Assembly (NCBI RefSeq): GCF_902459465.1
Contig: NC_047077.1
Span: 1,302,001-1,366,000, forward strand
Length of the DNA stretch: 64,000 nucleotides
Origin: Asterias rubens
Taxonomy: Eukaryota
Direction: 5' to 3'
Part shown: in pieces, positions 15,117-41,079 of the stretch
Position numbering within the stretch: the first letter of the stretch is position 1
Layout of the letters: each line of letters starts with the position of its first letter
Notes under the pieces: model-generated
Told to the model about the DNA's origin: nothing
The model's input: only the letters and a program-made list of their open reading frames with translations
Database searches by the model: none
Made by a program: the position numbers and the translations under genes

Positions 15117-15842
15117 TTACTCATGCTGATAGATTTGAAGTGATTTGACTTTAGCCACAACCAGATCACCAGCAGGTGTGAATGTGATACCATAGTGATA
15201 ACCACAATCCTTGATGATACATCCAATGTACTTGCCATCAGGACTGTAATGATGGATATAACCTGGTGATGAGTATGGTCCTCTCCGTACAGCAACATAG
15301 ATGCTACCATCCTTGTCACAACACACACCAAGAGGCCTCCCAGACTGATTGATATCTACTGAGAATACCATTTCATCATTGTAGGTTACTGATACTAACT
15401 TATTGTCTCTCAAGTTGGTGTAAATGAGTTGTTGTTTGTAGGTAGTCAAGTATCCACCAATTCCTGGAGCAGACAGTCTTCTGATGAGGGATCCATCTGG
15501 TTTGTGTAGAGAGATCTCTGCATTGTTATATGAAAGAACTGCTATCAGATTGTTGTAATCCACTGCAATACATGATGGTTTACTGCCTGGATCGAACTGA
15601 TGGAGGAGCTGATAATTCCTGCTGAAGATCTTGACTGTTTGATTATCTAGAACAATGAGCTCATCATTCTTATTCACAGCCACTCTGATTTTTCTGGTAA
15701 GACCTTGGAGGCATTCAAGACAAAATGAATGAGAACACTCCAGTAGTTTGGGTTGCTTGAAGCGTCCACTGCAAATTGGACATTCAAGATGATCTTGACT
15801 TATCTTTGCTAGCACTGACTGAACTGTTATATTGGATGCCAT
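15117..15842 (-). CDS. TRIM-NHL paralogue with in-frame internal deletion (partial RING fused to ~5 NHL blades, 241 aa); may be a pseudogene
   Basis: ORF from MASNITVQSV: CPIC..CSHSFCLEC then directly GLTRKIRVAVNKNDELIVL..IYQHE*. Versus the copy at 23967-25739 it lacks the last RING CxxC, the B-box, the coiled coil and the first NHL blade. A splice acceptor lies 27 nt upstream of the ATG (CAG at 15870-15872). Confidence 0.75.
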   Translation of the reverse strand: MASNITVQSVLAKISQDHLECPICSGRFKQPKLLECSHSFCLECLQGLTRKIRVAVNKNDELIVLDNQTVKIFSRNYQLLHQFDPGSKPSCIAVDYNNLIAVLSYNNAEISLHKPDGSLIRRLSAPGIGGYLTTYKQQLIYTNLRDNKLVSVTYNDEMVFSVDINQSGRPLGVCCDKDGSIYVAVRRGPYSSPGYIHHYSPDGKYIGCIIKDCGYHYGITFTPAGDLVVAKVKSLQIYQHE

Positions 15843-16139
15843 TTTGTTGGAAGTTGCTTCAGTGATGATCTGTGAAGTAAAAGAAGAAATCGACTCAATT
15901 AGATGAGATCCTTCTACATGTCCCAGTACTTTCCACATCAATGCAAGATGTGATTTCATGAACAAATTACACTCCTTGGCATAAAGTTTCATAACAGATC
16001 TTGATTTTTTGTTGTACATTCTATGATGACCAATCAAGTGGATAATTTACACGGTCATACTAAACTGCATGTCGATACAGTTACAGACTACAAGATCAAA
16101 GAAGTATAAGACTAGATGCGTCTTGTGCAGGTTGCCATA

Positions 16140-16295
16140 CTTGAGCAGGCATGTAAAGTTGGAGATTTGGGAGGGAAAACCCATGCAATGAGGTAGGGAC
16201 TGAAAACACATTCCACATGCAAGGCTTTGATCCTTTTAGTGAACTGGGATCCACAGAGGTGAAAGACAGGGAAAGAAACCACTGAGCCAATTTGA
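16140..16295 (-). mobile_element. tRNA-derived SINE with V-domain-like core in the 5' intron of the TRIM gene (paralogues ~26035-26165 and ~41405-41575)
   Basis: In the 41405-41575 copy the minus strand reads A-box TGGCTCAGTGG, B-box-like GGTTCAAATC, then gcatgtggaatg..tgcatgggttttccctgattggggtttccctcccacatctc, which resembles the V-SINE core. This copy keeps the A box and most of the core, but its B box is degraded. Confidence 0.6.
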
Positions 16296-16499
16296 TTTCA
16301 AATAAAGCAGGCACCAAAAGACATCCAAGCTCGTGAAATGATCCATGAAAATATCTTGTCTTTATTTAAATGAACAGAAGACTACTTAGTTTCCTTCCAT
16401 GAAGAGTGCATTAACTCCCCCCCCCCCCCACCCAGAACAACTTCCTCATGAATATTTTGTTTGCCCTAAAGAATCCTACTCTGTTACTAGCTAAAATAC

Positions 16500-17065
16500 A
16501 TTCACATTCACTGTCTGTACACATTCATAGTCAGACCCCCCCAACTGAAACATCCTTACTGTTCTGAGTATTGTTAGAACACTATACTCAGCAAGCAATG
16601 AACATTCACTGTCTGGACCCATTCATAGTCAGACCCCCCCCAACTAAAACATCCTTACTGTTCTGAATATTGTTAGAACACTATACTCAGCAAGCAATGA
16701 ACATTCACTGTCTGTACACATTCATAGTCAGACCCCCCCCCCCCAACTGAAACATCCTTACTGTTCTGAGTATTGTTAGAACACTATACTCAGCAAGCAA
16801 TGAACATTCACTGTCTGTACACATTCATAGTCAGACCCCCCCCCAACTAAAACATCCTTACTGTTCTGAGTATTGTTAGAACACTATACTCAGCAAGCAA
16901 TGAACATTCACTGTCTGTACACATTCATAGTCAGACCCCCCCCCCCAACTGAAACATCCTTACTGTTCTGAGTGTTGTTACAACACTATACGCAGCAAGC
17001 AATGAACATTCACTGCTGTACACATTCATAGTCGCCCCCACCCCTCCCCCCCCCCCGACCCCCAA
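16500..17065. repeat. ~100-bp minisatellite (~5.5 units) with variable poly-C tract
   Basis: Unit cattcactgtctgtacacattcatagtcagacc(c)n aactgaaacatccttactgttctgagtattgttagaacactatactcagcaagcaatgaa. Confidence 0.92.
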
Positions 17066-18296
17066 GCTAAAACATTTTAATTATTCAATGAAACATTTCA
17101 GACAATTCAGTCCATTTCATCTTTCTTGAGCTGTCTAGCCATGTTTTCTGTCGCTGCTTTCCAAGTTGTATCCTAAAACCATAGAGTAAAGTGATCCCTG
17201 GCTATACAGCAGTTAGGAGGTTGAATGGCTTCTGACCACGCCCCTAAATATCAAACTAAAGCATTTCAATTTTGTTTGCTACATGGTGGTAATATTGACC
17301 AATCACAATTGCATTTACAACTCACCCAGTATTTGAGTAAAGAATATAGCATGAAACACAGCAACAATCATTAAAGTTGATGAGGAAATTCCAGCAATAA
17401 TCTGTTTAATGTTGGCACAACACACTGAATGATGTCACACTGTATTTCCAGAGTTAAATAGCTCATAGTTTAACTTTGGAACAACACTCCTTATTTATTA
17501 CTGTTATGTGGAAATTCCAGTTTCTTATTTAGCTCTTATTTGTAGCAGTGTTATGGTTAACGTACAGTTCTACTGATACTGCACTTAGTGCATATTTACA
17601 CACTGAAATGATATCAATCTGAAAGTTCTTTGTGTCTGTGACCCCTAAATGTTCATTACTGGGACTCAGTGACTATTCAATAACAGGTTGTTGTACATTG
17701 GACCCCAGCATACAGCAATACTGGTCTGGTTTTGGATTCAGTCGTCATCTTTAAACAAACTTATTTCTTTTGAAACTTTAATTCATTTTTAACGGTCGTG
17801 GCAGACTCATTCTAATGCATATATTTAAAATAAGGAAGCTTTTTGTAAAATGAATATTGTTTTCTGTGTTTTAGTCATTGAAATACAGACTTTCATCATG
17901 CTTGTTTGAAATTCTATTTATAATTGATGCACTGCTGTTTGCTGCTTTTTGTTAATTAATGGTTGCCACATAAATCAAATATTAATTTTTTTTAAAGGTT
18001 TCAACAATAAATCCCAGAGCTGTTTTTTATACTGTTTGAAATACAGAAAGAACAAGATTTACTCTGCAGTAATTGTATTTGAAAGCCTTTTAAGCTTTGC
18101 CCTTAATTTGTATCACAGAGCGTAGACATTATTGATTATGTAAAAAGAGTTCATTTGCATTCATGTAAGTTGTGTATTACCCATAATCATTGGAAATGCA
18201 CACAATCACACTGAAACCTGTGCTGCAATTAGTTTGACAATCTTTGAATCCCTTATTTGAACCCTTCTTCTTTACTCTGATCCTCTTTTATCTCAG

Positions 18297-18464
18297 GCTT
18301 TGCTCCTCATCTTGGATGCCCATAACCATGGTAACCCAAGACCCATAAGATCCTACTCAGTCTCTGACTCCCAGGGTAGATGCTGAAGACTCTGGCAGTG
18401 AAGCTCTGAAGACACTGCAGGGAGAGTTGAAGATGTACAAGAAACAGGAAGCTCACAATGAGAG
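18297..18464 (+). pseudogene. Putative 168-nt (pseudo)exon, present in three copies (also 52941-53108 and 59739-59906)
   Basis: Polypyrimidine+CAG acceptor and AG|GTAAG donor are kept in all three copies. The best frame reads ..MVTQDP*DPTQSLTPRVDAEDSGSEALKTLQGELKMYKKQEAHNE, with the same TAA in every copy. Confidence 0.4.
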
Positions 18465-19251
18465 GTAAGCGATAGTCAGCATTTACTGTCAATGTTTATT
18501 TCATGTTGACATCTCTCCTCATAGACTTACAGATCTTCTTGTTTGTCACAGACATTTTTATTCATAGCCAGGAAATGTTTGTTTGTTATGCTCCCATCTT
18601 TGACATATCTGGGAGGATGATTTCTAGAGTTGGTTTGATGAGAGAAAACTTCTCACACAGCAGCAAACTGAAAAGGTTATTATGAGGTACCTGACTGCAT
18701 GGCATAATACAAACTGTTTTCAGGTGTATTCGTCTTCTATTGTTAGTAGTTGGTAACTGGTAAACATCATGAAAATGTAAGATTTTAGAGAAATATTAAA
18801 AAAAACTTCCCAAAGTCCTAATAATAGAAATTGAAAACTCTGAATGTAGAGGACAAAGTTCAAAGTGTTGTCGGCTTATATTTGCTACGAAATGTTGTGA
18901 CTAAGTGCACCACACTCTGGTGCTGGTGTTTCTGACCAGCAGAGTGTTGATTTGAGTCCCAGTCTTGTGACTTGTGTCATTAAACAAGTCACATAACTAT
19001 TGTTGGATCAGATCGGTTTTGGGGATCAAATGTATGTTCAATGTTTGGTGGTGGGGGGGGGGGGGGGGGACGGAATATGGAAGCAAACAGATAGCACTTA
19101 AATAGCGTTGGCCACAAGTCAAGTTTTTCACAGCTTAAGCTTCGAGCATGATTTTTCGATTTGAAGTTTTGGAACAGCATAACAAAGCAAACCTAAATTT
19201 GACCACGTTTTTTTGTCGCAAGTTTAGATTTTGATCTTACTTCTTGTTTAA

Positions 19252-19875
19252 AGCCATTCAACACTTTCGGTAAACAGTATTGTCCAAGTCCCACAGTTTG
19301 TGTGTCACAACTTATATATAAAATAACAAACCTGTAAAAATTTTGGCTCAATCGGTCATCGGAGTCGGGAGAAAATAACAGGAAAACCCACTCTTGTTTC
19401 CGCATGTTCCACCGTGTCATGACATGTGTTTAAAATAAACCCACAATTCGCGCTATCAAGAATTGATAGTGGTTTTAATGTTTTCTCAAAAAGTAAAGCA
19501 TTTCATGGAATAATATTTTAAGAGAAGTCTTTCACCATTACCTTCTGTAAACCCTGTAAATTATTTGTAAATCTATGAACTTTTTTTTTTTTTCTGTACC
19601 GAAAGTGTCCAATGGCTTTAAAGGATCTGTATTTGTTTTGGAAAACCCACTCTTGTTTCCGCATGTTCCACCGTGTCATGACATGTGTTTAAAATAAACC
19701 TGCAATTCGCGCTATCAAGAATTGATAGTGGTTTTAATGTTTTCTCAAAAAGTAAAGCATTTCATGGAATAATATTTTAAGAGAAGTCTTTCACCATTAC
19801 CTTCTGTAAACCCTGTAAATTATTTGTAAATCTATGAACTTTTTTTTTTTCCTGTACCGAAAGTGTCCAATGGCT
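19252..19875. mobile_element. Kolobok-type family A element with a 258-bp tandem duplication of its right part plus flank
   Basis: TTAA|AGCCATT at 19248-19258 and GGCT|TTAA at both 19614-19621 and 19872-19879. The paralogous empty site gtTTAAaggatctg is at ~60677. Confidence 0.8.
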
Positions 19876-20286
19876 TTAAAGGATCTGTATTTGTTTTGGT
19901 ATGGACTCTAAAAGATTAATGGCAATAAAAACTAACAACAAAAAGTACAGCTGCTTTGGATAGTGTACTGCATTTTGAGAAATGTTTCACTTCGAAGTAC
20001 TGTAGGTTTGGTAAAATATATCACTTTTTATCCCCAAATAATGTGGAACCAATTTTCTCCGTGATGACTTTGTAAATAATGCGTGAATAATATTGATGTA
20101 TATTCATCAAGTCTATCCTTTCTTCTCATAACTGTAAATGGTTTCAACTTCCTCAAATTCTACCCTGAGAGTTGCCCTACATAAAGGAGTGATTATACAA
20201 ACTGTAAATCCTGTTGAATGTGACACAATGTACAATGTAATTTTGTATGTTCTTGAGATTGGGTTTCCAGTCAAAATGGCATTTAA

Positions 20287-20637
20287 AGGCACTGGACACT
20301 ACTGTTAAATAACTCAAAATAATTGTTAGCATAAAAACTTTCTTGGTAACGAGCATTGGAGAGCTGTTGATAGTATAAACATTTTGAGAAATGGCTCCCT
20401 CTGAAGTAACTTCTCACTAAAACATTTTAATTGAATTTGAGACCTGAGCAGCTGAGTTCTTGCACTCCAGCAACTGAAAGCACACAACTTGTGCGACAAG
20501 GGTGCTTTCTATCATCTCTCGCAACTTCCATGACCAATTGAGTTCAAATGTTCACAGGTTTGTTCTTTTATTCATATGTTGAGATACACCTAATGAGAAG
20601 ACTGGTCTTCGACAATTACCAAATGTGTCCAGTGCCT
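20287..20637 (+). mobile_element. Kolobok-type MITE family B (similar copies ~35366-35729, ~52160-52505, ~54000-54380, ~57415-57787, ~58220-58455, ~61090-61444)
   Basis: TTAA|AGGCACTGGACAC ... GTGTCCAGTGCCT|TTAA, a 13-bp perfect TIR. Shared internal motifs gagctgttgatagtat, ggctccctctgaagta and gacaagggtg. Confidence 0.82.
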
Positions 20638-21261
20638 TTAAGAATGAAAAACCTGTACGCGTCAGTACAGGGCAATGTATACTGTGCACCAGAGCTACTT
20701 GCTGTTATAGTCAAAGATCAGACAAACAACCATTTATAATGATCAATGGCCAGATTATCAGTTTATTGGAGTATGGCTGCTGATAATGAACTTGGACTGT
20801 AAATACAAAAACAGTTTGAAGTACATCTAGGTCTGTTACCAGGTACTGTACATACATGTAGTACAGTGAATGGTCGTAAATAGCTGTACTCTTTGAAATG
20901 CTGACATAGTCAGATTTGTTTCTGCATTTTGAGGTACGTTTATGTAAGCGAGCAAATTGAGGTGAACTAATATTTTATTTATTTATTTTTTTTTTGGGGG
21001 GGGGGAGGAGGGGGGCACTGGATGTCGAAAAACCTCCAAAAGCGAGCACTGAAAGAGTTTACTAAATTAGACTTCAGAAGTTAAACTCAATATGAAAATG
21101 ATTTCAATAATAACTTTACAGTGTTTTTTGTTTTTCTATTTAATTTAATCTTAACAATTAATAATAATATAAAAAAAAGTAATTACTTGCAAAAGTATAA
21201 TGTCACTCCATTACCATAAAACATTTAGTGTACTGAATAGGAACGACGAGAAAAAAAAAGA

Positions 21262-21626
21262 AGGTCGTTAGTTCGAATCCCACTCTAGTCAATTCTTTGT
21301 TCAACCCCAAAAATCATTTACAAATTTACCCAGTCAGTTTCCCTTGTGGTTTATATTGATATCTGAAACAAAAAGTCGCATCCCCTTAAGGTGATCCCCT
21401 AGCTGCCGCTTCCCAGGTTGTATCGTAATTTGGGTGTGATCCCTGGCTACACAGCAGTTAACGGTTGTATGGCTTCTGACTGGCACCCCCGAACAAAGAT
21501 ATTGACAAAATAGGGACACCGCCAATATAGGGCTAGATAGCTCAGTTGGTAGAGCGCCGGCACGTTAATCCGGAGGTCGTTGGTTCGAATCCCACTCTAG
21601 TCAATTCTTTGTTCAACCCCAAAAAT
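21262..21626 (+). mobile_element. Insertion of 1.17 units of a 312-bp tRNA-containing repeat
   Basis: 53-bp direct repeats at 21262-21314 and 21574-21626. tRNA-like cloverleaf at 21531-21603. Flanked by aaaaaaaaaga on both sides. Absent at the paralogous sites (~36750 and ~61965). Confidence 0.85.
21531..21603 (+). ncRNA. tRNA-Asn(GTT)-derived pseudo-tRNA inside a repeat (second copy 34232-34304, minus strand)
   Basis: Acceptor stem GGCTAGA/TCTAGTC, D stem GCTC/GAGC, A box TAGCTCAGTTGG, B box GGTTCGAATCC. The anticodon loop ACGTTAA is non-canonical (A32, C33) and the T and anticodon stems have mismatches. Confidence 0.7.
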
Positions 21627-21764
21627 AAAAAAAAAAAGACTTAAGAAAACCTAACTTTACATACTAAAATTAAAGTAAAATAGAACCTTAAAAATCCACA
21701 GTAATAAAAACTGCAACAAAATAATCACAAAGACTACGTGTAAATTTGTACATGTAAGACTTAA

Positions 21765-23966: not shown

Positions 23967-25739
23967 TTACTCATGCTGATAGATTTTAACTGAATTGAAT
24001 GCAGCCACAACCAGATCACCAGCAGGTGTGAATGTGATACCATTGTGAACAGTACAATCATTGATACATCCAATGTACTTGCCATCAGGACTGTAATGAA
24101 GGATACCACCTGAAAATGAGTATGGTTTTCTCCTTACAGCAACATAGATGCTACCATCCTTGTCACAACACACACCAAGAGGGCTCCCATATAGATCGAT
24201 ATCTACTGAGAATACCATTTCACCATTGTAGTTTATGGCTAGTAACTCGCCACACCAGTTGGTGTAGATGAGTCTCTGTTTGTGGGTAGTCAAGTATCCA
24301 CCAATCCCTGGAGCAGACAGTGTTCTGATGAGGGATCCATCTGGTTTGTGTAGAGAGATCTCTGCCTTGTCTTGATAACCCACTGCTATCAGATTGTTGT
24401 CATCCACTGCAATACATGATGGCTCACTGCCTGGATTGAACTGATGGAGGGGCTGATAATTCCTGTTGAAGATCTTGACTGCTTCTCTATCTAGAACAAT
24501 GAGCTCATCATTCTTATTCACAGTCACTCTGCTTGATCCTCTAAGTCCTAGGAATGGTAGTTCTTCTAAAACATTATAGGATTGAGGGTTGCTCTCTGCT
24601 GGTATTGTAATCAACCTGGTAGTTTTCCAATCTGACACAACAATATCACTATTAGAGTATGCAGCAACATCCCATGCATAAATCTCCACAATGTTCTTGT
24701 AATTATTCATTTCTGTTTTTAATGTCCATTTGTCTTGTTTCATGGATTGAAATGTTGGCTTTCTAGCCTGAGCAGAAGTTGCTGATTCCACTTGTTGCTC
24801 ATCTTTCAGCACCAGTCTCCCTAGTGAGTTCTGGTCTTCTTTAAAGTCCATATAACTCAACCCATCAGGTACTTTTGTGGGTTTCTTCTCTCTGTATTCT
24901 TTGAGGTCTTGTAAGAGTTGTTCTATGTGATGTACAATCTTGATCTGTTGATCCATGAGTTGATTTACCTCATCCTGCTTGTGCTCTGCTTTGTTCTTCT
25001 CTTTGCTGTTTGTAGCTTGTGCAGTTTGCATTATCTTGACTCTGTCTTTATAAATCTGTTCTGCTTCTTGCATCAGTTTCTGCTTCTCCTCTCTGATCCT
25101 GGTAGCCACCTTGGCAATCTCCTCATCAGCCTTCTTGGTGATTTTCTCCTTGGTGGCAGCAAACATAGAGTCTAATGTCTTACGGGACGTATCTATTTCT
25201 TGAATGGCAGTGTTGAAGGTTGTGATACTCTGCCTAACTTCTGCTAGAAGTTCTGTTGCATGTTGTTTACTTTTGTCTGAAGCTTCATTCAGTTCTATTA
25301 CATGGTGCATTCTGTGGTCTTTAACAATGCAAGTTGTACATATCAGTTTCTTGCATGTTTCACAATACATGATAAGATCCTTGCCAGTATGCTTGCTACA
25401 CTTGGAAACAAACTCCTGACTGGGTACTTGTTTTCTTTGTTGCTGTTTCAGTTGGGTTTCCTGTGTTTCAATTGCTTCGATCAATGAAAGGGCTATTAAG
25501 TTTGTTTTGAGATCATCAATGCCATTTTCATTTAACAGAGTTTCGTGTCTACACACTGGACATGAAAGCCTTGTAGTAATTGGACTATTCTGTCCGAGTT
25601 GTTGAAGGCATTCAAGACAAAATGAATGAGAACACTCCAGTAGTTTGGGTTGCTTGAAGCGTCCACTGCAAATTGGACATTCAAGATGATCCTGACTTAT
25701 CTTTGTTAGCACTGACTCAGCTGTTATATTTGATGCCAT
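23967..25739 (-). CDS. Intact TRIM-NHL E3 ubiquitin ligase-like protein (RING, B-box2, coiled coil, NHL beta-propeller; no filamin domain), 590 aa, single coding exon
   Basis: C3HC4 RING (CPIC..CSHSFCLEC..CPVC), B-box (CSKH..MYCETCKKLICTTC..DHRMH), long heptad-rich region, NHL blades (IAVDDNNLIAV, GVCCDKDGSIYVA, GITFTPAGDLVVA). The ATG at 25739 is favoured because a conserved acceptor lies 27 nt upstream. Confidence 0.93.
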   Translation of the reverse strand: MASNITAESVLTKISQDHLECPICSGRFKQPKLLECSHSFCLECLQQLGQNSPITTRLSCPVCRHETLLNENGIDDLKTNLIALSLIEAIETQETQLKQQQRKQVPSQEFVSKCSKHTGKDLIMYCETCKKLICTTCIVKDHRMHHVIELNEASDKSKQHATELLAEVRQSITTFNTAIQEIDTSRKTLDSMFAATKEKITKKADEEIAKVATRIREEKQKLMQEAEQIYKDRVKIMQTAQATNSKEKNKAEHKQDEVNQLMDQQIKIVHHIEQLLQDLKEYREKKPTKVPDGLSYMDFKEDQNSLGRLVLKDEQQVESATSAQARKPTFQSMKQDKWTLKTEMNNYKNIVEIYAWDVAAYSNSDIVVSDWKTTRLITIPAESNPQSYNVLEELPFLGLRGSSRVTVNKNDELIVLDREAVKIFNRNYQPLHQFNPGSEPSCIAVDDNNLIAVGYQDKAEISLHKPDGSLIRTLSAPGIGGYLTTHKQRLIYTNWCGELLAINYNGEMVFSVDIDLYGSPLGVCCDKDGSIYVAVRRKPYSFSGGILHYSPDGKYIGCINDCTVHNGITFTPAGDLVVAAFNSVKIYQHE

Positions 25740-25766
25740 TTTGTTGGAAGTTGCTTTAATGATAAT

Positions 25767-25786
25767 CTGTGAAGTAAAAGAAGAAA
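25767..25786 (-). other. Splice acceptor of a 5'-UTR intron, 27 nt upstream of the TRIM ATG
   Basis: The minus strand reads tttcttcttttacttcaCAG|attatc. The same site at the same distance occurs in all three copies (15870-15872, 25767-25769, 41107-41109). Confidence 0.8.
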
Positions 25787-27878
25787 TTGACTCGTATAAT
25801 GCAAGACGTGATTTCATGAACATATTACAATCCTGGGCATAAAGTTAAAGATTTTTAAATTGACTGATTTCATAACACATTTTGATTTGTGTTCCATGTT
25901 CTAATTTGACCAATCAAGTAGGTATTTTACACTGTCACCCTAAACTGCATGTCAAAACAGTTACAGTTACAGACATATCACAAGATCAAAGAAGTATAAG
26001 ACTTGATGCCTCTTTTGCAGGTTGCCATACTTGAGCAGGTATGTAAAGTTGGAGATGTGGGAGGGAAACCCCAATCAGGGAAAACCCATGCAATGAGGTA
26101 GGGACTGAAAACACATTCCATATGCAAGGCTTTGATCCTTGTAGTGAACTGGGATCCACAGAGGAAAGACAGGCGAGTAAGCTGATACAAATAAGATTGA
26201 AGAAAATTCTGCTTTCACCATCCTGGAGTCATTTTAGCTTCACCTATGCTTTGTTAAGCGTATCTCTTAGTTATGACACCATGGAGTCGCATACAAACTC
26301 AAGCACTTTCATGCTCAGCGTCCATAGACTTGATTTCAAGTCTGAGGTGGCTGTTATTCCTCTGTATGAGACACGAAATACGCCCGCAATAGGTTAGCTG
26401 TCATGGGACAAGGTAATAATAGGGCGCTATTTGGGGCAATACTGTATTTGCTATCAAGTTGACTGGAAGAAACGATTGCAGGCTTGAATCAAGTTTACAC
26501 GGTTCACCGTAGTAAAGTAAATTAGGAAATTAATGAATTTTCTTTTCTATTTGATATAAAGGGTTAACCGTTTGAGTTTGTGTAAAAAAAAACGAATGAG
26601 GTGGTTGAATAAATAACAAAAGGTTATGTGTTATTTGTGGACTGTAATGGCATTTTCGTGTTGAAAAACAGACATTTGCCGGTAAGTTAGCTGTCAAAAT
26701 GCTATGGTTATCCGTGTGGTGAACCGTACGACATGAACGCAAGCAACTAAATTGGACAGGTACATTATTTGTGTGCGCAGGCGCAAGGCGCTCGTGTCAG
26801 GAATCGTCATCGCGCCTCACAGTAAAAGGCAATGCAGGTTTTGTACGGGCTATTTCGGCAGTTACACATGCTTCAATATTATTTAACGGACTTTATACCC
26901 AACAATACAAGATGCAAGCGAACTTACATAATTAATTTAGGTGTAACCCATGAATATAGTTATGTTTTATTTGTTAAAGCGAGTAAAGCAAAGTCATGTC
27001 AAGGAGTCCATTTCAGCGAGCATGAATATGCAGTGTGAGAAAAGCAGTCGTAAAATCTTTTGCTTAGCGCCAAAGAGAGGAAAATAAAATTTCGCCTCAC
27101 ACAATGACGCTCGTACGAGTTACTTAGTGCCATACAGGGGGTAATCAAGTTTACTTATAACACAATGCACTCTCTGTATGACCAATAAGGTTTGACTTAA
27201 GACATAGCGTACATGTGTTTGCTTTTTTTAATGTGCTTTCGTCTTAACATCTGATTTGGTCAAGATGGACGACCCTTCCCTTAGACCCTGTCAAATGCGA
27301 CAAGTGTATTTAATAACATACAGTCAAGCTCTGCCAGTCCCTCGCCCCCCCCTACCCCCACCCCTCCAAAAAAAATCACCAAAAAACCAACCCAAAACAC
27401 CACTACCCCCATTGACCGAGCAATAACACTCTCTGCCAGTCCCTCTCTGCCGAGTACATTTCTAAGATTTGTGACTCTACCTGTACAAACAAACTGCAAT
27501 CACATGATGTATACAATGTATTAGGTGTATGAATTTAATCATTTTGTTCCTTGTCTATGTGTTTCTCTACTTAGTCTACCCATGGAGGTATAATTAGAAC
27601 AATTCAACCTCCATGGTCTACCCTACTGTACAAGACTGTAGGGATTCATACAGACATCATCATTGGTACTGTTCAGTATCACTTTGAATGCTGCCCTCAT
27701 GTGGCAAATACATTGACACCATAACTTTGCTGTGCTGATTTTGGTGCCCTGGGGCCTACACACAAATCAGCTTATTATGGCATAGATTCGGCTTTCTGCA
27801 ATTCATGTGTCTACTAAAACAAACTCATTATCCTTAAACAAAATCTGAACAAAATCAACTCTGATAATAATATACACA

Positions 27879-28033
27879 TAATGAATGTTTATGAGTGCAA
27901 TGGTGCAAATATGTTCATGAGTTGAAAGATGGAATGTTCTATTCAACGAGGCGGAGCCGAGTTGAATGGAACATTCCAGCTTTCAACGAATGAACATATT
28001 CGCACCATTGCACGAATGAAAAACATTCATTAT
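27879..28033. repeat. Fold-back element centred on GGCGGAGCC
   Basis: ~70-bp imperfect inverted arms (ataatgaatgtt..ttcaac / gttgaa..aacattcattat). Similar centre-hairpin elements occur at ~43200-43235 and ~57080-57125. Confidence 0.7.
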
Positions 28034-28038
28034 TTGTT

Positions 28039-28384
28039 TTATATAACATCCAAGTAGATCTTTGTCATTTTGATTGAAAGATACAACTTTCAAAACAAAC
28101 AAAGCGTAGGCCTCCAATTTTTAATTGTAGAAGACGAATGCTAGTAATTTTACTAATATGCCTTGCTGCGTTACCGAAGACAACGCGCACGCAGTGATGT
28201 TTTTACTCAGCTTTTTCGTTCCATCCGAAAAGTACCATTGCACGCTGGCAGCGTGCAATGGTACTTTTCGGATGGAACGAAAAAGCACGGTGAGTGACTC
28301 AGCGTGCAATGGTACTTTTATTTGCTATCACGTGACGGACAATCCTCCAATCAAATGGCAAGGATCTGCTTGGGTGTTATATAA
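28039..28384. mobile_element. MITE with ~38-bp TIRs containing an internal perfect palindrome
   Basis: TIR ttatataacatccaagtagatctttgtcattttgattg / caatcaaatggcaaggatctgcttgggtgttatataa. Internal 38-bp perfect inverted repeat at 28210-28286. Confidence 0.7.
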
Positions 28385-28984
28385 TAAGCTATAAATAAGA
28401 GTAAACTGTTGGATAATGTACTAATCCTCTTTTGGGGTAGTGTTGGCTCTGAAAAGCACCAGTTTGGTCTTGACTTTTCAAACAGTGCACTCTGCTAGTC
28501 TAGAGCAAAGAACATCACTTTAACTCGAACCCGATTCTGACTAATCTTATAATCAACTTACTTGAGTTATGACAGAAGAAGATGGCTAGAAACACAGCAT
28601 CCAATCTGTTAGATGAGTAGTATATTCAAGCAATGATCCGTTGGACTATTACACAGTGACACTCCCTACCTGGTACTGCTATAAGTCTGACTGTGAACAT
28701 TGCGAAATGTGGAAATACCAAATTCTATATTTAAGTCTTTGTGTTGTGTGAATGAAGTGTAGTATGCATGGATAACTTTGAGTCAGCTTTTCAGATTCAA
28801 ACTAGGCAGGGTATTCTTATGATAAATATCAATATTGTACTGTTGTGTTGAGGTCACTAAGGTCTTACATGTATTTACACTGGCTGGTTCTATGCTTATG
28901 AAATGAGTGGGTGTATGGGGTTTGGGTTTGTTATTGTAGGATCACCTCATTGGCTGTACATTGCGCATTGTGTGTAGGTTCTGT

Positions 28985-31580: not shown

Positions 31581-31660
31581 TTTCCTCATCCATTCTACGA
31601 ATAATAAAGATATGTTAGTTGTGTTTTTCCTCTTAGGATGAATAAGGCATTTCCGTAACT
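31300..31660. repeat. Array of ~60-bp self-complementary units in mixed orientation (paralogue ~49555-49850)
   Basis: The unit aggatggttgaggcatttcct(t)aaccatcct and its reverse complement aggaaatgcctcaaccatc recur. Confidence 0.65.
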
Positions 31661-32925: not shown

Positions 32926-32981
32926 ACCCACTCAGAATAGTTACATGTAGCCGATCTATCGGTGAAACTACTGGTAACCGA

Positions 32982-33115
32982 TAGCCTGTGCTGGTCTCAC
33001 TCTTGGCTTGATTCTTGAGGATCCAGCGCCGAAGTTGAATGGGCAATCTTTTGGACCAGTGCCCTGGCATTCCGCAGCTGAAGCTAATGTCAGCATTTGG
33101 CATGCCTGTCCAAAC
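32982..33115 (-). pseudogene. Degenerate CCHC zinc-knuckle fragment (gag/ORF1-like remnant)
   Basis: The minus strand reads ADI(S)FSCGMPGHWSK[+1]DCPFNFGAGSSR..GYQ*. This is CX2CX4HX4C with the first C as AGC instead of TGC and one extra A. Confidence 0.5.
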
Positions 33116-34162: not shown

Positions 34163-34457
34163 ATCAATATAAACCACAAGGGAAACTGACTGGGTAAATT
34201 TTGAAATGATTTTTGGGGTTGAACAAAGAATTGATTAGAGTGGGATTCGAACCGACGACCTCCGGATTAACGTGCCGGCGCTCTACCAACTGAGCTATCT
34301 AGCCCGATGTTTGCGGTGTCCCTATTTTGTCAATATCTTTGTTTGGGGGTGCCAGTCAGAAGCCATACAACCGTATAGCTGTGTAGCCAGGAATCACACC
34401 CACAATACGATACAACCTTGGAAGCGGCAGCTAGCCAATTCTTTGTTCAACCCTGAA
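34163..34457 (-). mobile_element. Second, differently permuted insertion of the 312-bp tRNA-containing unit, with 13-bp TSD and a short inverted end
   Basis: TSD gaatattaatgtt at 34150-34162 and 34458-34470. tRNA-like part at 34232-34304. Bases 34436-34453 are the reverse complement of 34216-34233. Confidence 0.82.
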
Positions 34458-34678
34458 GAATATTAATGTTGACGCATACTGCGTTACTGCATCAGTTGGT
34501 TTACATCATACATACTGGAAGGTTTCAATACCCCTGCAATAAGTGAACCACCTTTTCCACAATTCATTGTGTGTGAATTTCCACCACCTTACTGGTGCTT
34601 CATTGCTTCAACAGCTCATGGATACTTGCAATCGCCCCAGTATAAAAAATAATTAAAGACCTCCTTAGTTTTGCTGGG

Positions 34679-35130
34679 AAAATACTGAGGCAGTTGAGAT
34701 GGTAGTCTACCTTCCTCATTCTAGAGTAGATCTTAACTGCTAGGCCAATGAGCTCACCCAGTGACAAGGAGCAAGTTTGAATCATATTGAAATACTGAGA
34801 CTGTTGAGATGTTAGTCCACAGTTGAGATGGTAGTCTACCTTCCTCATTCTAGAGTAGATCTTAACTGCTAGGCCAATGAGCTCACCCAGTGACAAGGAG
34901 CAAGTTTGAATCATATTGAAATACTGAGACTGTTGAGATGTTAGTCTGCCTTCCTCATTCTAGTGTAGATCTTAACTGCTAGGCCAATGAGCTCACCCAG
35001 TGACAAGGAGCAAGTTTGAATCATATTGAAATACTGAGGCAGTTGAGATGGTTGTCCACCTTCCTCATTCTAGAGTAGATCTTAACCACTACATGTAGAC
35101 TAATGAGCTTACCCAGTGACAAGGAGCGTT
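34679..35130. repeat. ~110-130-bp tandem repeat, 4 units
   Basis: Unit aaatactgag.c.gttgagatg..ccttcctcattctagagtagatcttaactgctaggccaatgagctcacccagtgacaaggagcaagtttgaatcatattg. Confidence 0.9.
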
Positions 35131-36156
35131 TAAACAAAGCCGTGATTTGAATAAAATATTTATTTCAATGTTTACTCTCTGTTAGTTATAACTTGGAATT
35201 ATAGCATACAAATTGGGAATTACTTAAAATATAGAAAAGCAAAATAGGTAAAACAATTAATGACTGATTCTTGTTACTTTAACCATAGATTATGTGCCAT
35301 GAACGTATACAAACTAAATAAGAGTACATGAAATGCAGTATACATGTAGTCCAAAGAGGTATTAAGGGCACTGTACACGTTTGGTAATTACTCAAAATTT
35401 AGCATAAAACCCTACTTGGTAACAAGCAACGGAGAGCTGTTGATAGTATAAAACATTGTGATAAACAACTACCTATGAAGTAATGTAGTGTTTGAGAAAG
35501 AGATAATTTTTTAATTAAATTTATAAAAGACTTCTGGTCAGAAGAGGCCTTTTATTCCTATCTGAAAGCACACTATTTTGTATAGCAAGGGTGTTTTTCT
35601 TTCATCATTTTCTTGCGACTCCAATCACCAATTGAGAACAAATTTTCCAGGCTCGTTATTTTATGCATAGTTGGGATACACCAAGTGAGAAGACTGGTCT
35701 TTGACAATTACCAACAGTGTCCAGTGTCTTTAAGTCACAGCAATGTCACAACAAAACCTCAAAGGATACAAATTTGCTTTAACTTTTAAACTTATAAACT
35801 GTATTAAAACTTATAAACCACAAAGGGAACTGACTAATATTTATAAACGATACAATGTTTGTGTGACCTAGAGAGGTGAGATCTTACAATGATCAGACTG
35901 TTGTAGTTTATTTGCTTTTGTCAGGGTTCCATGTTGGCACTGATATTCCACAAAACGGCAAACTGGTTCGGAAAATTGATCATGCAGGTGATTCAGAGGA
36001 AAATTTTAGAAATCTAATCCAAAGCGATTAAACTCGATAAAACATATACCATGTTTTTTTTTTACTCTGTATATTTTCTTGGTTGATGAAATGATATTAA
36101 TTTATCTGTTGCCGAAATGTTTACTACAGCCTCAATGTTATTGTGGTCCAGCATAA

Positions 36157-36346
36157 AGCCCGGTTCATACTTCATGCGAAAGCGAATGCGAAGCGAATTT
36201 GACGCTAATTTGACGTCACTACCCTCCTTTCGCAGCGATATTCGCAAGTGAGTCGAGCAGAGTTCAACTGCTGCGAATTATTCGTTGCAAATTGTGACGT
36301 CAACATTCGCTTTGCATTCACATTCGCAGGAACTATGAACCGGGCT
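36157..36346. mobile_element. PIF/Harbinger (Tourist-like) MITE inserted just 3' of the TRIM remnant
   Basis: TIR AGCCCGGTTCATA/TATGAACCGGGCT extending imperfectly for ~55 bp. TAA TSD at 36154-36156 and 36347-36349. The flanks rejoin the sequence seen 3' of the other TRIM stop codons. Confidence 0.85.
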
Positions 36347-36364
36347 TAAGGTTTGGTATTGTCT

Positions 36365-36467
36365 TTATTCATGCTGATAGATTTGAACTGATCTGTTTGT
36401 AGCCACAACCAGATCACCAGCTGGTGTGAATGTGAGACCATTGGGGGTAACACAATCCTTGATGATA
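36365..36467 (-). pseudogene. 3' remnant of a fourth TRIM-NHL gene
   Basis: Encodes IIKDCVTPNGLTFTPAGDLVVATNRSVQIYQHE*. Beyond 36467 the sequence switches to one homologous to ~20960. Confidence 0.88.
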
Positions 36468-39279
36468 GAGGTGAACTAATGTTTTATTTATTTATTTGGG
36501 GGGGGAGGAGGAGGGGGGCACTGGATGTCGAAAAACCTCCAAAAGCGAGCTCTGAAAGAGTTAACTAAATTACACTTCAGAAGTTAAACTCAATATGAAA
36601 TTGATTTCAATAAGAACTTCACAGTTTTTTTTTATTCTATTTAATTTAATCTTAACAATTGTTAATAATAATAAAAACAGTAATTACTTGCAAAAGTATA
36701 ATGTCACTCCATTACCATAAACCATTTATTGTACTGAATAGGAACGACGAGAAAAAAAAAAGACTTTAGAAAATAAAATAGAACCTTAAAAATCCACTTT
36801 AATAAAAACTGCAACAAAATAATCACAAAGACTACATGTACATTTGTACATGTAAGACTTAAAGGAACTGGAAACATTTGCTAAAATCAAAGACCATGAT
36901 TCCCACTTGTGTATTCCAACATGTGCATGAAATAATAAATCTCAGAAGTATGGACTCAATTGGTCATTGAAGTTGCAAGGAAATAAATCAACGAAAAAAC
37001 ACCCATGTTGCACAAATGCATGCTTTCAGATGCCTGAAAAAGGCTTCATTCCTGAACTGTTTCTCAGATTCAAAAATTTTAGTGAGTCATAACTTTCTTT
37101 TCAAAAATATGTTTCTGTGAGGGAGTCGTTTCTCACCATGTTTTCGCTATCAACATCTCCCCGGTGCTTGTTAAAAAAGTGTGCATTTTAGTAATAACCA
37201 AACATGTCCAGTGCTATTTAAAAGAAACTAAACTCTACAACATTTAAAACACAATTTATATGGTTCTGCTTTACAAATCTGATTTTTTGCTTTTTTAAAG
37301 GGAAGGTACACGTTTGGTAATTACTCAAGACAAACACTAACTTAAAAACTGACTTGGTAACGAGCATTAGAGAGCTGTTGATAGTATAAAACATTGTGGG
37401 AAACGACTCCCTCTGAAGTAACGTAGTTTTTGAGAAAAAGGTAATTTCTCTCTAAAATAACAAAAGACTTCTAGCCAGAAGTCTTTTATTCTTATCTGAA
37501 AGCACACAAATTCGTCCAACAAGGGTGTTTTTTCTTTGATCAATTTCTCGCAACTTCATTGACCAATTGTGCCCAAATTTTCACAGGCTTGTTGTTTTAT
37601 GGTTATAAAGGGATACACCAAGTGCGAAGACTGTCTTTGACATTTACCAAATGTGCACCTACCCTTTAAACAAATTACATTTGAGTTGTTTAGCAATGCT
37701 TCAGATACGGATATGTCAACACTTTATGTGTTCATGTAATGCGTAAATGTTGCTTCGGTGTTTTTCATGCATGTTGACAAGAGATGCTGGAGCTCATACA
37801 CATGTATGTTTGTCCAGAATGGATACTGTTTTGCTGATTTAGTTGTATTGTTGCCCTGGATTCAAAACATTTTCCCTGGTATTGCTTGTATTCATATGCA
37901 AGCAGTTGTGGTTTACAAACAGTTCCATGTGGTTAATGAACATTGTGCATTCAAACCCATATCAAATACTTGTGCAGTAAATGTATGTACGTACATGTAA
38001 TGTGCCTTGGAATAGGCCTCTGGAATTTGTTATTTCCCATCTGAACTTCTTCCTCCTTATTAGAACACCACTCTTAAAGTTACATTGTGCACTCACTTGT
38101 ACATTAGTATAATTGTACAAGTACAATTGCGTTGAGCAACATAATGTAGTGTGCTTCTTAACATTTCAAATTATTTCTGTTTGTTTGCATCAAGGTGTTG
38201 AATCTTGGTCGCAGATTGATTTTGTAATAAGAATGATTGTGAACATTAAAACTGTGGCCCAATATTATAACTTGAATTCAGCACTGACCCTTCATACCAA
38301 CTACATAAGATTTTCACTTTCAACATAATCACTTAACTACATACAGTTGTTGTTTTCATTATACATGTGTACACCTGTCAGCCTACACTTAGGCTGGACA
38401 TTTTGTAACTCAATAACCATCATTCTATTACCAGACACAACAAATTACAAAAAACACAATTGAACTTTGCAAAATGTGTTTTGGCATCATTTGTTACTGT
38501 GGAATACATACTATGAAAGATTGTATTCCTACCAAAATGTTCATTTCTTTGTGAGTTGACTGAATTTGCTTATCTGCTCAGGTTGGTTGAAATGGTTCAA
38601 TGAAATGCTTTTTTTTTCCACTTAAAAACAATTACAATTTGTATGTCAAAAATGTTATCACTCTTTCTGAAATTTATGAGAATATAAAATTGAAGATATT
38701 TTTGAAAAACTTCCACATTGTTCTCTCTTGTCAATAATGCATTAATCATCATTTTCTACTTCACTAGCCAAAACATCATATTTATAGCAAAACTTTATTT
38801 TACAAACCAATGCGTAAAAGAAACACCATAGTTTCAGTGAATTATTTAAACAAATGTTTCCTTTAAGAAACACTTATTGCATTATGAGATTATTGTCAAG
38901 CTATTATAACCATTCTCATTGATGAAGTAATAGTTGTATCATGTTTGCTTTGCACAATAACCAAAATATCAACATCCAAATTTACAAATACATCGATAAA
39001 GTTTAACTGCATTTTTTTTTTTTTGCACTGTTCCCCTAAAATAAAAAACTGGTTCATAAAATTAATCTTGGGGTTGTTCCTGAAAAACGTGGAATCCTGA
39101 ACCCAAGTGGTGAAGTATAATAATGTTTCTTTCATGTTTTGTTGTCACATATGATAGCATATCTGGTGAGTGAAATGATATTTTCGCAATATGATATTAT
39201 TATTTATTAGTTTCATGTTGTCAAATGCTTACTTCAGCTTGAATGTTATTCTGGTCCAGCATAATGTTTGTTGATGTCT

Positions 39280-41079
39280 TTACTCATGCTGATAGATATG
39301 AACTGAATTGTCTGTAGCCACAACCAGATCACCAGCAGGTGTGAATGTGATACCATTGGGATAACCACAATCCTTGATGATACATCCAATGTACTTGCCA
39401 TCAGGACTGTAATGATGGATATCACCTGATGATGGGAATGGTTCTCTCAATACAGCAACATAGATGCTACCATCCTTGTCACAACACACACCATTGGGCC
39501 ACCCAGACTGATTGATATCTACTGAGAATACCATTTCACCATTGTAGGTTACTGATACTAACTTCCTGGTCTCCCAGTTGGTGTAAATGAGTCGCTGTTT
39601 GTAGGTAGTCAAGTATCACCAATCCCTGGAGCAGACAGTCTTCTGATGAGGGATCCATCTGGTTTATGTAGAGAGATCTCTGCCTTGAAAGGATGACCCA
39701 CTTCATGACCCACTGCTATCAGATTGTTGTCATCCACTGCAATACATGATGGTTCACTGCCTGGATTGAACTGATGGAGGAGCTGATAATTCCTATTGAA
39801 GATCTTGACTGCTCCTCTATCTAGAACAATGAGCTCATCATTCTTATTCACAGTCACTCTGCTTGGTCCTGTAAGTCCTTGGATTGATAGTTCTTGTGAG
39901 ACATTATAGGATTGAGGGTTGCTCTCTGCTGGTATTGTAATCAAGCTGGTATTATCCAATCTGCCACAACAATATCACTATTAGAGTATGCAGCAACATC
40001 CCTTGCATGAATCTTCACCATCTGTTGTTTCATGTTCTTGTATTTATTCATTTTTGTTTTTAATGTCCATTTGTCTTGTTTCATGGATTGAAATGTTGGC
40101 TTTCTAGCCTGAGCAGAAGTTGCTGATTCCACTTGTTGTTCATCTTTCAGCACCAGTCTCCCTAGTGATTTCTGGCCTTCTTTAAAGTCCATATAACTCA
40201 ACCCATCGGGTACTTTTGTTGATTTCTTCTCACTGTATTCTTTGAGGTCTTGTAGGAGTTGTTCTATGTGATGTACAATCTTCATCCGTTGATCCATGAG
40301 TTGACTTACCTCATCTTGCTTGAGCTCTGCTGTGTTTATCTCTTTGCTGTTAGTAGCTCGTGCAGTTTGCATTATCTTGACTCTGTCTTTATAAATCTGT
40401 TCTGCCTCTAGCATCAGTTTCTGCTTCTCCTCTCTGATCCTGGCAGCCACCTTGGCAATCTTCTCATCAGCCTTCTTGGAGATTTTCTCTTTGGTGGCAG
40501 CAAACATAGAGTCTAGTTTCTTACGAGACGTGTCTATTTCTTGAATGGCAATGGTGAAGGTCGTGATGCTCTGTCTTACTTCTGCTAGAAGTTCTGACGC
40601 ATGTTGTTTACTTTTGTCTGAAGCTTCACTCAGTTCTATTACAGGGTGTGTTCTGTGGTCTTTTGAAATGCAAGTTGTACATATCAGTTTCTTGCATGTT
40701 TCACAATACAGGATAAGATCCTTGCCAGTATGCTTGCTACACTTGGAAACAAACTCCTGACTGGGTACTTGTTTTTCTTGCTGCTGTTTCAGTTGAGTTT
40801 CCTTTGTTTCAATTGCTTCTATCAATGAAATGGTTTTAAAGTCTGTTTTCAGACCATCAATGCCGGTTTCTTTTAAAAGAGTTTCTTTTCTACACACTGG
40901 ACATGAAAGCCTTGTAGTACTTGACTATTCTGTCTGAGTTGTTGAAGGCATTCAAGACAAAATGAATGAGAACACTCCAGTAGTTTGGGTTGCTTGAAGC
41001 GTCCACTGCAAATTGGACATTCAAGATGATCCTGACTTATTTCTGCTAGCACTGACTGAACTGTTATATTGGATGCCAT
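39280..41079 (-). pseudogene. Full-length TRIM-NHL paralogue broken by three single-base deletions (pseudogene or assembly error)
   Basis: ORF pieces 40873-41079, 39941-40897, 39609-39959 and 39280-39612 tile the 590-aa paralogue. Frameshifts at ~40922, ~39953 and ~39617. No substitution-derived stops in the reconstructed frame. Confidence 0.85.

What the first reader, a model, noticed from the sequence alone, without database searches (positions are those of the whole stretch)
15117..41079. TRIM-NHL birth-and-death cluster with invariant RING and hypervariable propeller loops
Seen: an 86-nt RING-coding stretch (25606-25691) is identical, synonymous sites included, in all three copies. NHL differences instead cluster in short inter-strand segments: LSYNN / GYQDK / GHEVGHPFK, NLRDNK / NWCGE / NWETRK, NQSGRPL / DLYGSPL / NQSGWPN, RRGPYSSPGY / RRKPYSFSGG / LREPFPSSGD, GYHY / TVHN / GYPN / VTPN, and AKVK / AAFN / ATDN / ATNR. 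Established: NHL propellers bind RNA or protein through their loops, and TRIM expansions are typical of antiviral innate immunity. Inference: a diversifying family of ligand sensors coupled to a homogenised E3 module.
Basis: partly seen in the sequence, partly recalled or inferred. Interest (0 to 1): 0.7.

Follow-up and report, generated by a model that had tools for sequence, protein, structure and literature searches.

The report
Fast-evolving starfish TRIM-NHL gene cluster
In the common starfish, a young tandem family of ubiquitin-ligase genes keeps its enzyme end and protein scaffold constant while selection repeatedly changes one face of its propeller-shaped binding domain, as in vertebrate virus-restricting TRIM genes but on a different fold.

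Summary
The window (Asterias rubens, contig C17) holds one intact single-coding-exon RING/B-box/coiled-coil/NHL gene (B). It also holds an internally deleted copy (A), a pseudogene with three frameshifts (C) and a 3' fragment (D).

- **Selection:** With loops classed from an AlphaFold model of B, not from variability, top-face loops (bB-bC, bD-bA) give dN/dS 2.6-4.3, and all 95% intervals exclude 1. Bottom-face loops give 0.33-0.36. The result repeats within A. rubens and within A. amurensis.
- **Site models:** These reject neutrality (2dlnL about 350). About 30 of 32 selected sites lie in or next to top loops.
- **Turnover:** The C17 subfamily has 6 intact, 2 nearly intact and at least 10 dead copies. 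A. amurensis has about 35 close homologues.
- **Recombination:** Exchange between paralogues is pervasive (PHI p<0.001).
- **RING:** It is not specially homogenised. Its synonymous identity fits young gene age plus purifying selection (P about 0.18).

The ligand and any immune role are untested, and expression of B itself was not shown. This scan noted similar arrays elsewhere in this genome. I found no paper describing them.

The parts
23967..25739 (-). Copy B: intact coding sequence (590 aa plus stop) of a RING/B-box/coiled-coil/NHL protein, all in one exon
   Evidence: ORF. Pfam finds RING, B-box and NHL. The full-length AF2 model shows RING, B-box, long helices 150-284 and a propeller at 338-589.
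25551..25679 (-). B RING finger, C21 to C63, with all eight C3HC4 ligands present
   Evidence: The ligand columns are invariant in a 60-sequence alignment. Pfam zf-C3HC4.
25606..25691 (-). The 86-nt stretch identical in A (15709-15794), B and C (40946-41031)
25305..25400 (-). B-box zinc finger (residues 114-145)
   Evidence: Pfam PF00643. C/H ligands are invariant.
24888..25292 (-). Coiled-coil region (helices at residues 150-208, 214-261 and 268-284)
   Evidence: AF2 full-length model
23973..24728 (-). Six-bladed NHL beta-propeller (residues 338-589)
   Evidence: AF2 pLDDT 89.7, pTM 0.89. Foldseek best hits are the Thin, TRIM2, TRIM3, Mei-P26, Brat and TRIM71 NHL domains, TM about 0.8.
23991..24707 (-). 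Span holding the 11 hypervariable top-face loops of B: 24678-24707, 24618-24629, 24483-24488, 24417-24437, 24363-24374, 24306-24314, 24249-24257, 24186-24200, 24114-24131, 24039-24050, 23991-24002
   Evidence: Loop coordinates. dN/dS 2.6-4.3. 19 of the 32 selected sites lie in these loops.
25767..28561 (-). 5'UTR intron of B. The donor reads AAG|GTAAGT at 28562/28561. The acceptor CAG ends at 25767, so exon 2 starts at 25766.
   Evidence: A spliced contig joint in run X1. The sequence.
15117..15842 (-). Copy A: open 241-codon ORF with an in-frame internal deletion. The first six RING ligands are fused to NHL blades 2-6. The last C-x2-C pair, B-box, coiled coil and blade 1 are missing. The junction is at 15710/15709.
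39280..41079 (-). Copy C: full-length pseudogene with 1-nt deletions after 40924, 39952 and 39618. It also has a 12-nt tandem duplication in a top loop (39689-39700).
36365..36475 (-). Fragment D: the last 36 codons of an NHL domain plus the stop codon, with no upstream homology

Best explanation
This is part of a young, tandemly duplicating family of cytosolic TRIM-type E3 ubiquitin ligases in Asterias. The C-terminal six-bladed NHL propeller acts as the variable recognition module.

Shown here:
- The scaffold strands and the bottom face are conserved.
- The top face, formed by the bB-bC and bD-bA loops and the adjoining strand ends, is under strong positive diversifying selection. In Brat and LIN-41 this face binds the ligand.
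- Copies are gained and lost quickly. Duplications date to about the A. rubens / A. amurensis split, many copies are pseudogenes, and copy number differs several-fold between the two species.
- Segments are exchanged between paralogues, pseudogenes included, so loop variants are reassorted.

Inferred:
- Each paralogue binds a different, fast-changing ligand on its top face and directs RING-dependent ubiquitination or sequestration of it.
- The likeliest driver is a genetic conflict with viruses or other intracellular parasites. This is by analogy with TRIM5alpha and fish finTRIMs.

The confidence given is for the evolutionary reading (diversifying selection on the top face, plus birth-and-death turnover). 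I put the pathogen-sensor function alone at about 0.5.
For: Architecture:
- RING, B-box, coiled coil and propeller are all found.

Selection on the top face, with loops defined from structure:
- Pairwise NG86 dN/dS for top loops is 2.64 (95% bootstrap 1.56-5.53) in 6 intact A. rubens genes and 2.91 (1.85-4.67) in 16 intact genes of both species.
- It rises to 4.29 (2.59-8.18) after gapped and gap-adjacent columns are removed.
- Bottom loops give 0.33-0.36, with similar or higher dS.
- The result repeats within A. rubens (2.85) and within A. amurensis (5.02).

ML codon models:
- My code reproduces IQ-TREE lnL.
- M0 omega is 0.81 for RING, 0.47 for B-box, 0.51 for coiled coil and 1.72 for NHL.
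- For NHL, M2a against M1a gives 2dlnL 345.7, with 18.6% of sites at omega 7.4. M8 against M7 gives 353.9.
- RING and B-box are not significant.
- Of 32 sites with P>0.95, 19 lie in top loops and 10 in strand residues 1-3 positions from a top loop. One more strand site (model residue 73) adjoins the unclassified blade-1 segment, 1 lies in that segment and 1 is in a bottom loop. Fisher top against bottom gives p=3e-5.

Which face is which:
- The bB-bC and bD-bA loops define the top surface, which is the RNA-binding face of Brat NHL (PMC4015489).

Turnover:
- There are 16 RING-bearing copies on C17, of which 6 are intact.
- A. amurensis has about 35 homologues.
- The tree shows species-specific clades.
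- The orthologue pair L008/P0021 has pS 0.050. Paralogues in the B clade have pS 0.028-0.093 and whole-gene pN/pS 0.8-1.1.

Recombination:
- PHI is 0.398 against 0.527 +/- 0.007 in permutations.
- The nearest copy changes from one 150-nt window to the next.
Against: - No ligand, no E3 activity and no immune induction was tested.
- RNA reads at 97% identity or better lie only sparsely on B, and most carry paralogue variants. Transcription of B itself is therefore not shown.
- B was not among the database proteins returned, whereas L002, L004 and L006 are RefSeq proteins.
- Recombination inflates site-model likelihood ratios. The tree-free pairwise result is the safer basis.
- Top-face net charge ranges from -2 to +7, so it is not uniformly positive as in RNA-binding NHL domains.
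- Three of the four copies in this window are dead.
- Face assignment rests on DSSP topology of a predicted model. It does not rest on measured coordinates.
Confidence: 0.75

Rival explanations
1. Same diversifying selection, but a different driver. The propellers would track endogenous or genomic targets, such as transposon RNAs or proteins, germline or meiotic-drive factors, or diverging mRNA targets, rather than pathogens.
For: Canonical TRIM-NHL proteins are RNA regulators that bind through the top face. The cluster lies among transposons: a piggyBac ORF at 44958-47378, tRNA-derived repeats and a LINE fragment. The selected sites are rich in aromatic and basic residues (W, R, Y, K). An earlier scan note describes a TRIM-NHL gene fused to a retroelement nuclease in this genome (unchecked).
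Against: Nothing here tells this driver apart from pathogen-driven selection. Top-face charge is not consistently positive.
Confidence: 0.2
2. Relaxed constraint in a decaying cluster. The loops would simply tolerate change, and the copies would be drifting towards pseudogenes.
For: Most copies are dead. Strand dN/dS is about 1.3-1.6. Expression of B itself was not shown.
Against: Neutrality predicts omega near 1. Top loops give 2.6-4.3 with lower bounds of 1.6-2.6, and bottom loops stay at 0.33-0.36. Intact 590-600 codon ORFs persist in both species. Three paralogues are RefSeq proteins.
Confidence: 0.05
3. Artefact. The apparent positive selection would come from misaligned indel-rich loops, or from recombination breaking the single-tree assumption.
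For: Loops carry indels. The PHI test shows strong recombination.
Against: After removing gapped and gap-adjacent columns, top-loop omega rises to 4.29. The pairwise counts use no tree. The structural classes were fixed before dN/dS was computed.
Confidence: 0.03

Closest known systems
Teleost finTRIM (ftr) genes and primate TRIM5alpha
   Same: Both are clustered, lineage-specific TRIM expansions. The RING/B-box regions are nearly identical, and the loops of the C-terminal recognition domain are under strong positive selection (PMC2657112).
   Different: The recognition domain there is B30.2/SPRY, whereas here it is a six-bladed NHL propeller. Virus induction and restriction are shown there and are untested here.
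Canonical TRIM-NHL proteins (Brat, Mei-P26, Thin, LIN-41/TRIM71, TRIM2, TRIM3, TRIM32)
   Same: They share the RING/B-box/coiled-coil/NHL order and the propeller fold, with TM about 0.8. The top face is the ligand face.
   Different: Those are single-copy, conserved developmental and RNA regulators, and several carry a filamin domain. The genes here have no filamin, share only 16-20% NHL identity with them, exist as many copies, and have a hypervariable top face.
Podospora het-d/het-e/nwd WD40 NLR-like genes
   Same: They are also a beta-propeller recognition domain in a multigene family. Sequence is exchanged between members, and positive diversifying selection is confined to the interaction surface (PMC1805685).
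   Different: They are WD40 repeats on a NACHT protein. Exchange there is of whole repeat units, with repeat-number variation and RIP. They act in fungal allorecognition.

Membership tests
TRIM (RBCC) proteins | N-terminal C3HC4 RING finger with all eight zinc ligands | tested here: met
   Pfam RING models match. C21, C24, C36, H38, C41, C44, C60 and C63 are invariant in 60 homologues. Copy A lacks the last pair.
TRIM (RBCC) proteins | B-box zinc finger after the RING | tested here: met
   PF00643 at E 4.6e-9, residues 140-177. The C/H ligands at 114-145 are invariant.
TRIM (RBCC) proteins | Coiled coil after the B-box | tested here: met
   The AF2 full-length model has helices at 150-208, 214-261 and 268-284, pLDDT about 65-85. 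Dimerisation was not tested.
TRIM-NHL subgroup | C-terminal six-bladed NHL beta-propeller | tested here: met
   AF2 pLDDT 89.7 with 23 strands in six blades. The best Foldseek hits are NHL domains of TRIM-NHL proteins. Pfam NHL scores 28 bits.
TRIM-NHL subgroup | Filamin/Ig domain between coiled coil and NHL (present in TRIM2, TRIM3 and TRIM71, not universal) | tested here: not met
   There is no Pfam filamin hit. Residues 303-334 form a low-confidence linker. The layout resembles TRIM32, Brat and Mei-P26.
TRIM-NHL subgroup | RNA binding on a positively charged top face | tested here: inconclusive
   Net charge of top-face residues ranges from -2 to +7 among 16 intact paralogues. No binding assay was possible.
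E3 ubiquitin ligase | RING-dependent ubiquitin transfer | not testable with these tools
   Only the presence of the domain is shown.
Birth-and-death multigene family | Tandem copies with pseudogenes, lineage-specific gain and loss, and some trans-species orthologues | tested here: met
   There are 6 intact, 2 nearly intact and at least 10 dead copies on C17. Species-specific clades sit beside the 1:1 orthologue pair L008/P0021, whose flanks are syntenic.
Diversifying-selection recognition family (TRIM5/finTRIM type) | dN/dS above 1 concentrated on the ligand-binding surface | tested here: met
Diversifying-selection recognition family (TRIM5/finTRIM type) | Induction by infection, or demonstrated restriction of a pathogen | not tested
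   No challenge data were examined. The RNA reads laid on B were sparse and ambiguous between paralogues.

The most novel reading that the evidence does not exclude
Sea stars have turned the RNA-binding NHL propeller into a hypervariable intracellular receptor repertoire against viruses or retroelements. New specificities would arise in the germline by short-tract exchange of about eleven top-face loop cassettes among functional genes and a reservoir of pseudogenes. This would be an NHL-based counterpart of TRIM5/finTRIM with combinatorial loop shuffling.
Probability: 0.25. Interest if true: 0.8.

Novelty: new variant of a known kind. Interest (0 to 1): 0.62.

Why it matters
Rapidly diversifying TRIM restriction factors are known from vertebrates and use the B30.2/SPRY domain. 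This finding shows the same evolutionary pattern in an echinoderm, built on an NHL propeller that is otherwise known from conserved developmental RNA regulators. The pattern has four parts:
- clustered duplication and loss
- a constant ligase end
- a recognition surface with omega well above 1
- exchange of segments between paralogues

The work yields a defined set of about 30 candidate specificity residues on one face of a confidently modelled fold, and paralogues that differ almost only at those residues. That makes ligand discovery by pull-down, CLIP or loop swaps directly feasible. This matters in a group of animals whose intracellular antiviral immunity is poorly known and which suffers mass-mortality disease. 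In eight of nine full-text searches (the ninth only looked up the NHL top-surface papers) I found no paper describing this.

Tried and rejected
1. **B-specific expression.** The first read-laying run failed because the machine was busy. The repeat gave only 0-3x depth on B at 97% identity or better. Reads over the RING carry paralogue variants (25579 A>C, 25595 C>T). Family transcription and the 5'UTR splice are therefore supported, but expression of B itself is not. No run held half or more of the sampled words of B.
2. **RING homogenisation by gene conversion.** I tested this and it is not needed. I rejected it as a distinct claim.
3. **A nucleotide-level functional element in the 86-mer.** The 86-mer is also exact in two A. 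amurensis genes. Because species divergence is only about 5%, that sharing carries little information.
4. **Replication in more distant A. rubens subfamilies (C22, C5, C12, C15 loci).** Amino-acid identity is mostly 43-77%, with two 94% pairs, which is too diverged for reliable dS. The same pattern of conserved scaffold and variable top loops is visible by eye only.
5. **IQ-TREE omega.** IQ-TREE did not report omega. I wrote a codon-ML routine and validated it against IQ-TREE lnL.
6. **Literature.** Searches for TRIM-NHL expansion or selection in echinoderms and other invertebrates found nothing specific. The oyster immune-expansion paper does not mention TRIM or NHL.
7. **Steps not taken.** No complex prediction was run because no ligand is known. 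The 3D coordinates of the models were not available to scripts, so I assigned faces from strand topology.
Full report
**What is in the window**

The window is G000:C17:1302001-1366000 of a 418-Mb assembly. Contig C17 is 14,301,440 bp long. It is the contig that carries the RefSeq proteins named TRIM3-like and TRIM2-like of Asterias rubens. Three of my extracted ORFs are identical to those proteins.

A tblastn search with the one long ORF finds four related elements, all on the minus strand:

| Copy | Window coordinates | State |
|---|---|---|
| A | 15117-15842 | Internally deleted, ORF still open |
| B | 23967-25739 | Intact, 590 codons |
| C | 39280-41079 | Full-length pseudogene |
| D | 36365-36475 | 3' fragment only |

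- **Copy A** has an in-frame deletion equal to 351 codons of B. It fuses the first six RING ligands directly to NHL blades 2-6. A propeller without blade 1 and its closing strand, on a RING lacking its last zinc pair, is unlikely to work.
- **Copy C** has three 1-nt deletions, after 40924, 39952 and 39618. None lies in a long homopolymer.
- **Copy D** is the last 36 codons plus the stop codon.

**Checking the observation**

The 86-mer is exactly shared by A, B and C. In the whole genome it occurs 7 times exactly and 16 times with up to 3 mismatches, always on C17.

**Gene structure and fold**

- Pfam finds RING, B-box and NHL in B.
- All eight RING ligands and all eight B-box ligands are invariant across 60 homologues.
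- A full-length AlphaFold model gives RING, B-box, three long helices (150-284), a disordered linker and a propeller. There is no filamin domain.
- The propeller modelled alone has pLDDT 89.7 and pTM 0.89.
- Its best PDB matches are the NHL domains of Thin, TRIM2, TRIM3, Mei-P26, Brat and TRIM71, with TM about 0.8.
- The coding sequence lies in one exon. A polypyrimidine-CAG acceptor sits 27 nt upstream of the ATG. A spliced contig joins it to a donor reading AAG|GTAAGT at 28562/28561, about 2.8 kb upstream.

**The family**

A six-frame search of the genome gives more than 100 matches. The close subfamily, at 65-92% amino-acid identity to B, lies entirely on C17 in three groups: 0.13-0.18 Mb, 1.28-1.53 Mb and 2.16-2.22 Mb.

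- Six copies are intact: B, L002, L003, L004, L006 and L008.
- L005 has a C-terminal frameshift and L007 has one stop codon.
- At least ten copies are pseudogenes or fragments.
- A. amurensis has about 35 homologues at more than 70% identity on one chromosome.

**Test of the hypervariable-loop claim**

To avoid circular reasoning, I classed residues from the DSSP strands of the B model, not from their variability. By definition, the bB-bC and bD-bA loops form the top surface and the bA-bB and bC-bD loops form the bottom surface. The top surface is the RNA-binding face of Brat (PMC4015489).

Pairwise Nei-Gojobori dN/dS, with codon bootstrap intervals:

| Data set | Top loops | Bottom loops |
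|---|---|---|
| 6 intact A. rubens genes | 2.64 (1.56-5.53) | 0.33 |
| 16 intact genes, both species | 2.91 (1.85-4.67) | 0.36 |
| Same, gapped and gap-adjacent columns removed | 4.29 (2.59-8.18) | 0.36 (0.18-0.90) |

- Bottom loops have equal or higher dS than top loops.
- The contrast holds separately within A. rubens (2.85 against 0.33) and within A. amurensis (5.02 against 0.41).

I wrote a codon maximum-likelihood routine. It reproduces IQ-TREE's log-likelihoods for the B-box and coiled-coil partitions.

| Region | M0 omega | M2a against M1a |
|---|---|---|
| RING | 0.81 | p=0.08 |
| B-box | 0.47 | p=0.07 |
| Coiled coil | 0.51 | 2dlnL 16.2 |
| NHL | 1.72 | 2dlnL 345.7 |

- For NHL, 18.6% of sites fall at omega 7.4. 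M8 against M7 gives 2dlnL 353.9.
- 32 sites have posterior above 0.95. Of these, 19 lie in top loops and 10 are strand residues 1-3 positions from a top loop.
- One further strand site (model residue 73) adjoins the unclassified blade-1 segment. One site lies in that segment and one in a bottom loop.
- Fisher's test, top against bottom, gives p=3e-5.
- The selected columns alternate among W, R, K, Y, Q, D, N and G.
- Among about 27 copies, each top loop has 15.4 distinct variants on average, against 4.9 for bottom loops.

That criterion is not met, so the claim stands.

**Recombination**

- The PHI statistic for the whole gene is 0.398, against 0.527 +/- 0.007 in permutations. For the NHL alone p<0.001.
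- Partition trees disagree. For example, a deep B-box lineage shared by Aa40a, Aa41a and Aa42 dissolves in the NHL tree.
- For B, C and L002, the nearest copy changes from one 150-nt window to the next. It is often a pseudogene such as L031, L033 or L036.
- This weakens the site-model likelihood ratios, so I rest the conclusion on the tree-free pairwise counts.
- It also means that loop variants are reassorted among copies.

**Is the RING specially homogenised?**

- Outside the RING core, 6% of amino-acid-identical degenerate codons differ among A, B and C. This gives P of about 0.18 for no synonymous difference in the 28 core codons.
- Across 28 copies of both species, the core has 6/29 synonymous-polymorphic columns, against 38% gene-wide (p=0.04). 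It ranks 47th of 575 windows.
- Windows in the NHL domain and the first codons of the gene rank lower.
- The identity is real. It is explained by strict amino-acid constraint in a young family and needs no RING-specific conversion.

**Age and turnover**

- L008 and A. amurensis P0021 are 1:1 orthologues. Their flanks are 94.9% identical over 3.8 kb, with pS 0.050 and pN/pS 0.37.
- The A. rubens-only clade of B, L002, L003 and L004 has pairwise pS of 0.028-0.093 and whole-gene pN/pS of 0.82-1.11.
- These duplications therefore date from about the time of the species split or later, and the copies diverged fast.
- A. amurensis has several clades of its own.
- Together with the pseudogenes, this is birth-and-death evolution with superimposed exchange between copies.

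**What remains open**

- RNA-seq reads at 97% identity or better cover B at only 0-3x, and they mostly carry paralogue variants. No indexed run holds half of B's sampled words.
- B was not among the database proteins returned, although three paralogues are RefSeq proteins. Whether B itself is expressed is unknown.
- Top-face net charge ranges from -2 to +7, while the bottom face stays at -2 to -6. This neither supports nor excludes RNA as the ligand.
- An immune role is an analogy with TRIM5alpha and finTRIMs. [quoted passage not shown]
- A second analogy is the fungal WD40 non-self-recognition genes. There, sequence exchange between members is combined with positive selection on the propeller's interaction surface (PMC1805685).

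**Prior knowledge**

Eight of the nine full-text searches looked for a description of diversifying NHL propellers in echinoderm or other invertebrate TRIMs and found none. The ninth only looked up the NHL top-surface papers. Earlier notes of this scan report similar TRIM-NHL arrays elsewhere in this genome, and one follow-up reached the same reading. I did not test those loci.

**Verdict**

This is a real feature. The 'homogenised E3' reading is not needed, and the function is inferred only. It is a new variant, NHL-based, of a known kind: clustered, positively selected TRIM recognition families.

Noticed in passing
window 27800-28400: A roughly 600-bp stretch inside B's 5'UTR intron has RNA depth up to about 45x in three RNA-seq runs. 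It shows many variant positions and loose read ends, so it looks like a transcribed dispersed repeat rather than part of the gene.
   Followed up: no
window 39689-39700: Copy C carries a 12-nt insertion that imperfectly repeats the preceding 12 nt (first nine bases identical), inside the blade-3 top loop (GHEV-GHPF). This suggests replication slippage as one source of loop-length variation.
   Followed up: partly
L008 (G000:C17:2184627-2186414) and L043:10001-11791: One family member, L008, has a clean 1:1 A. amurensis orthologue with syntenic flanks and pN/pS 0.37. Not every copy is diversifying at the same rate.
   Followed up: partly
alignment codons about 56-200 (B window 25140-25574): Two deeply diverged linker/B-box sequence types coexist in both species. 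The second type is in L007, L032, L034, L035, Aa40a, Aa41a and Aa42. They are attached to otherwise similar RING, coiled-coil and NHL scaffolds, which indicates a mosaic origin.
   Followed up: partly
window 44958-47378 (+): An 806-codon open reading frame, which another note of this scan calls an intact piggyBac. It lies about 4 kb upstream of pseudogene C.
   Followed up: no
window 21531-21603 (+) and 34232-34304 (-): Two tRNA-Asn(GTT)-like sequences in opposite orientation flank gene B. Another note of this scan describes a tRNA-containing repeat unit here.
   Followed up: no
window 41916-42524 (+): A 202-codon ORF just upstream of copy C. I guess from its sequence alone that it is the C-terminal part of a retroelement protein.
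   Followed up: no
window 34600-34914 (-): A 104-codon ORF containing two tandem copies of a stretch of about 47 residues, which points to a local tandem duplication.
   Followed up: no
G000:C5:14.38-14.70 Mb: A second, larger array of more than 20 TRIM-NHL genes at about 46% identity to B. It matches in two pieces (about 1-145 and 108-588), which suggests an intron after the RING exon.
   Followed up: no
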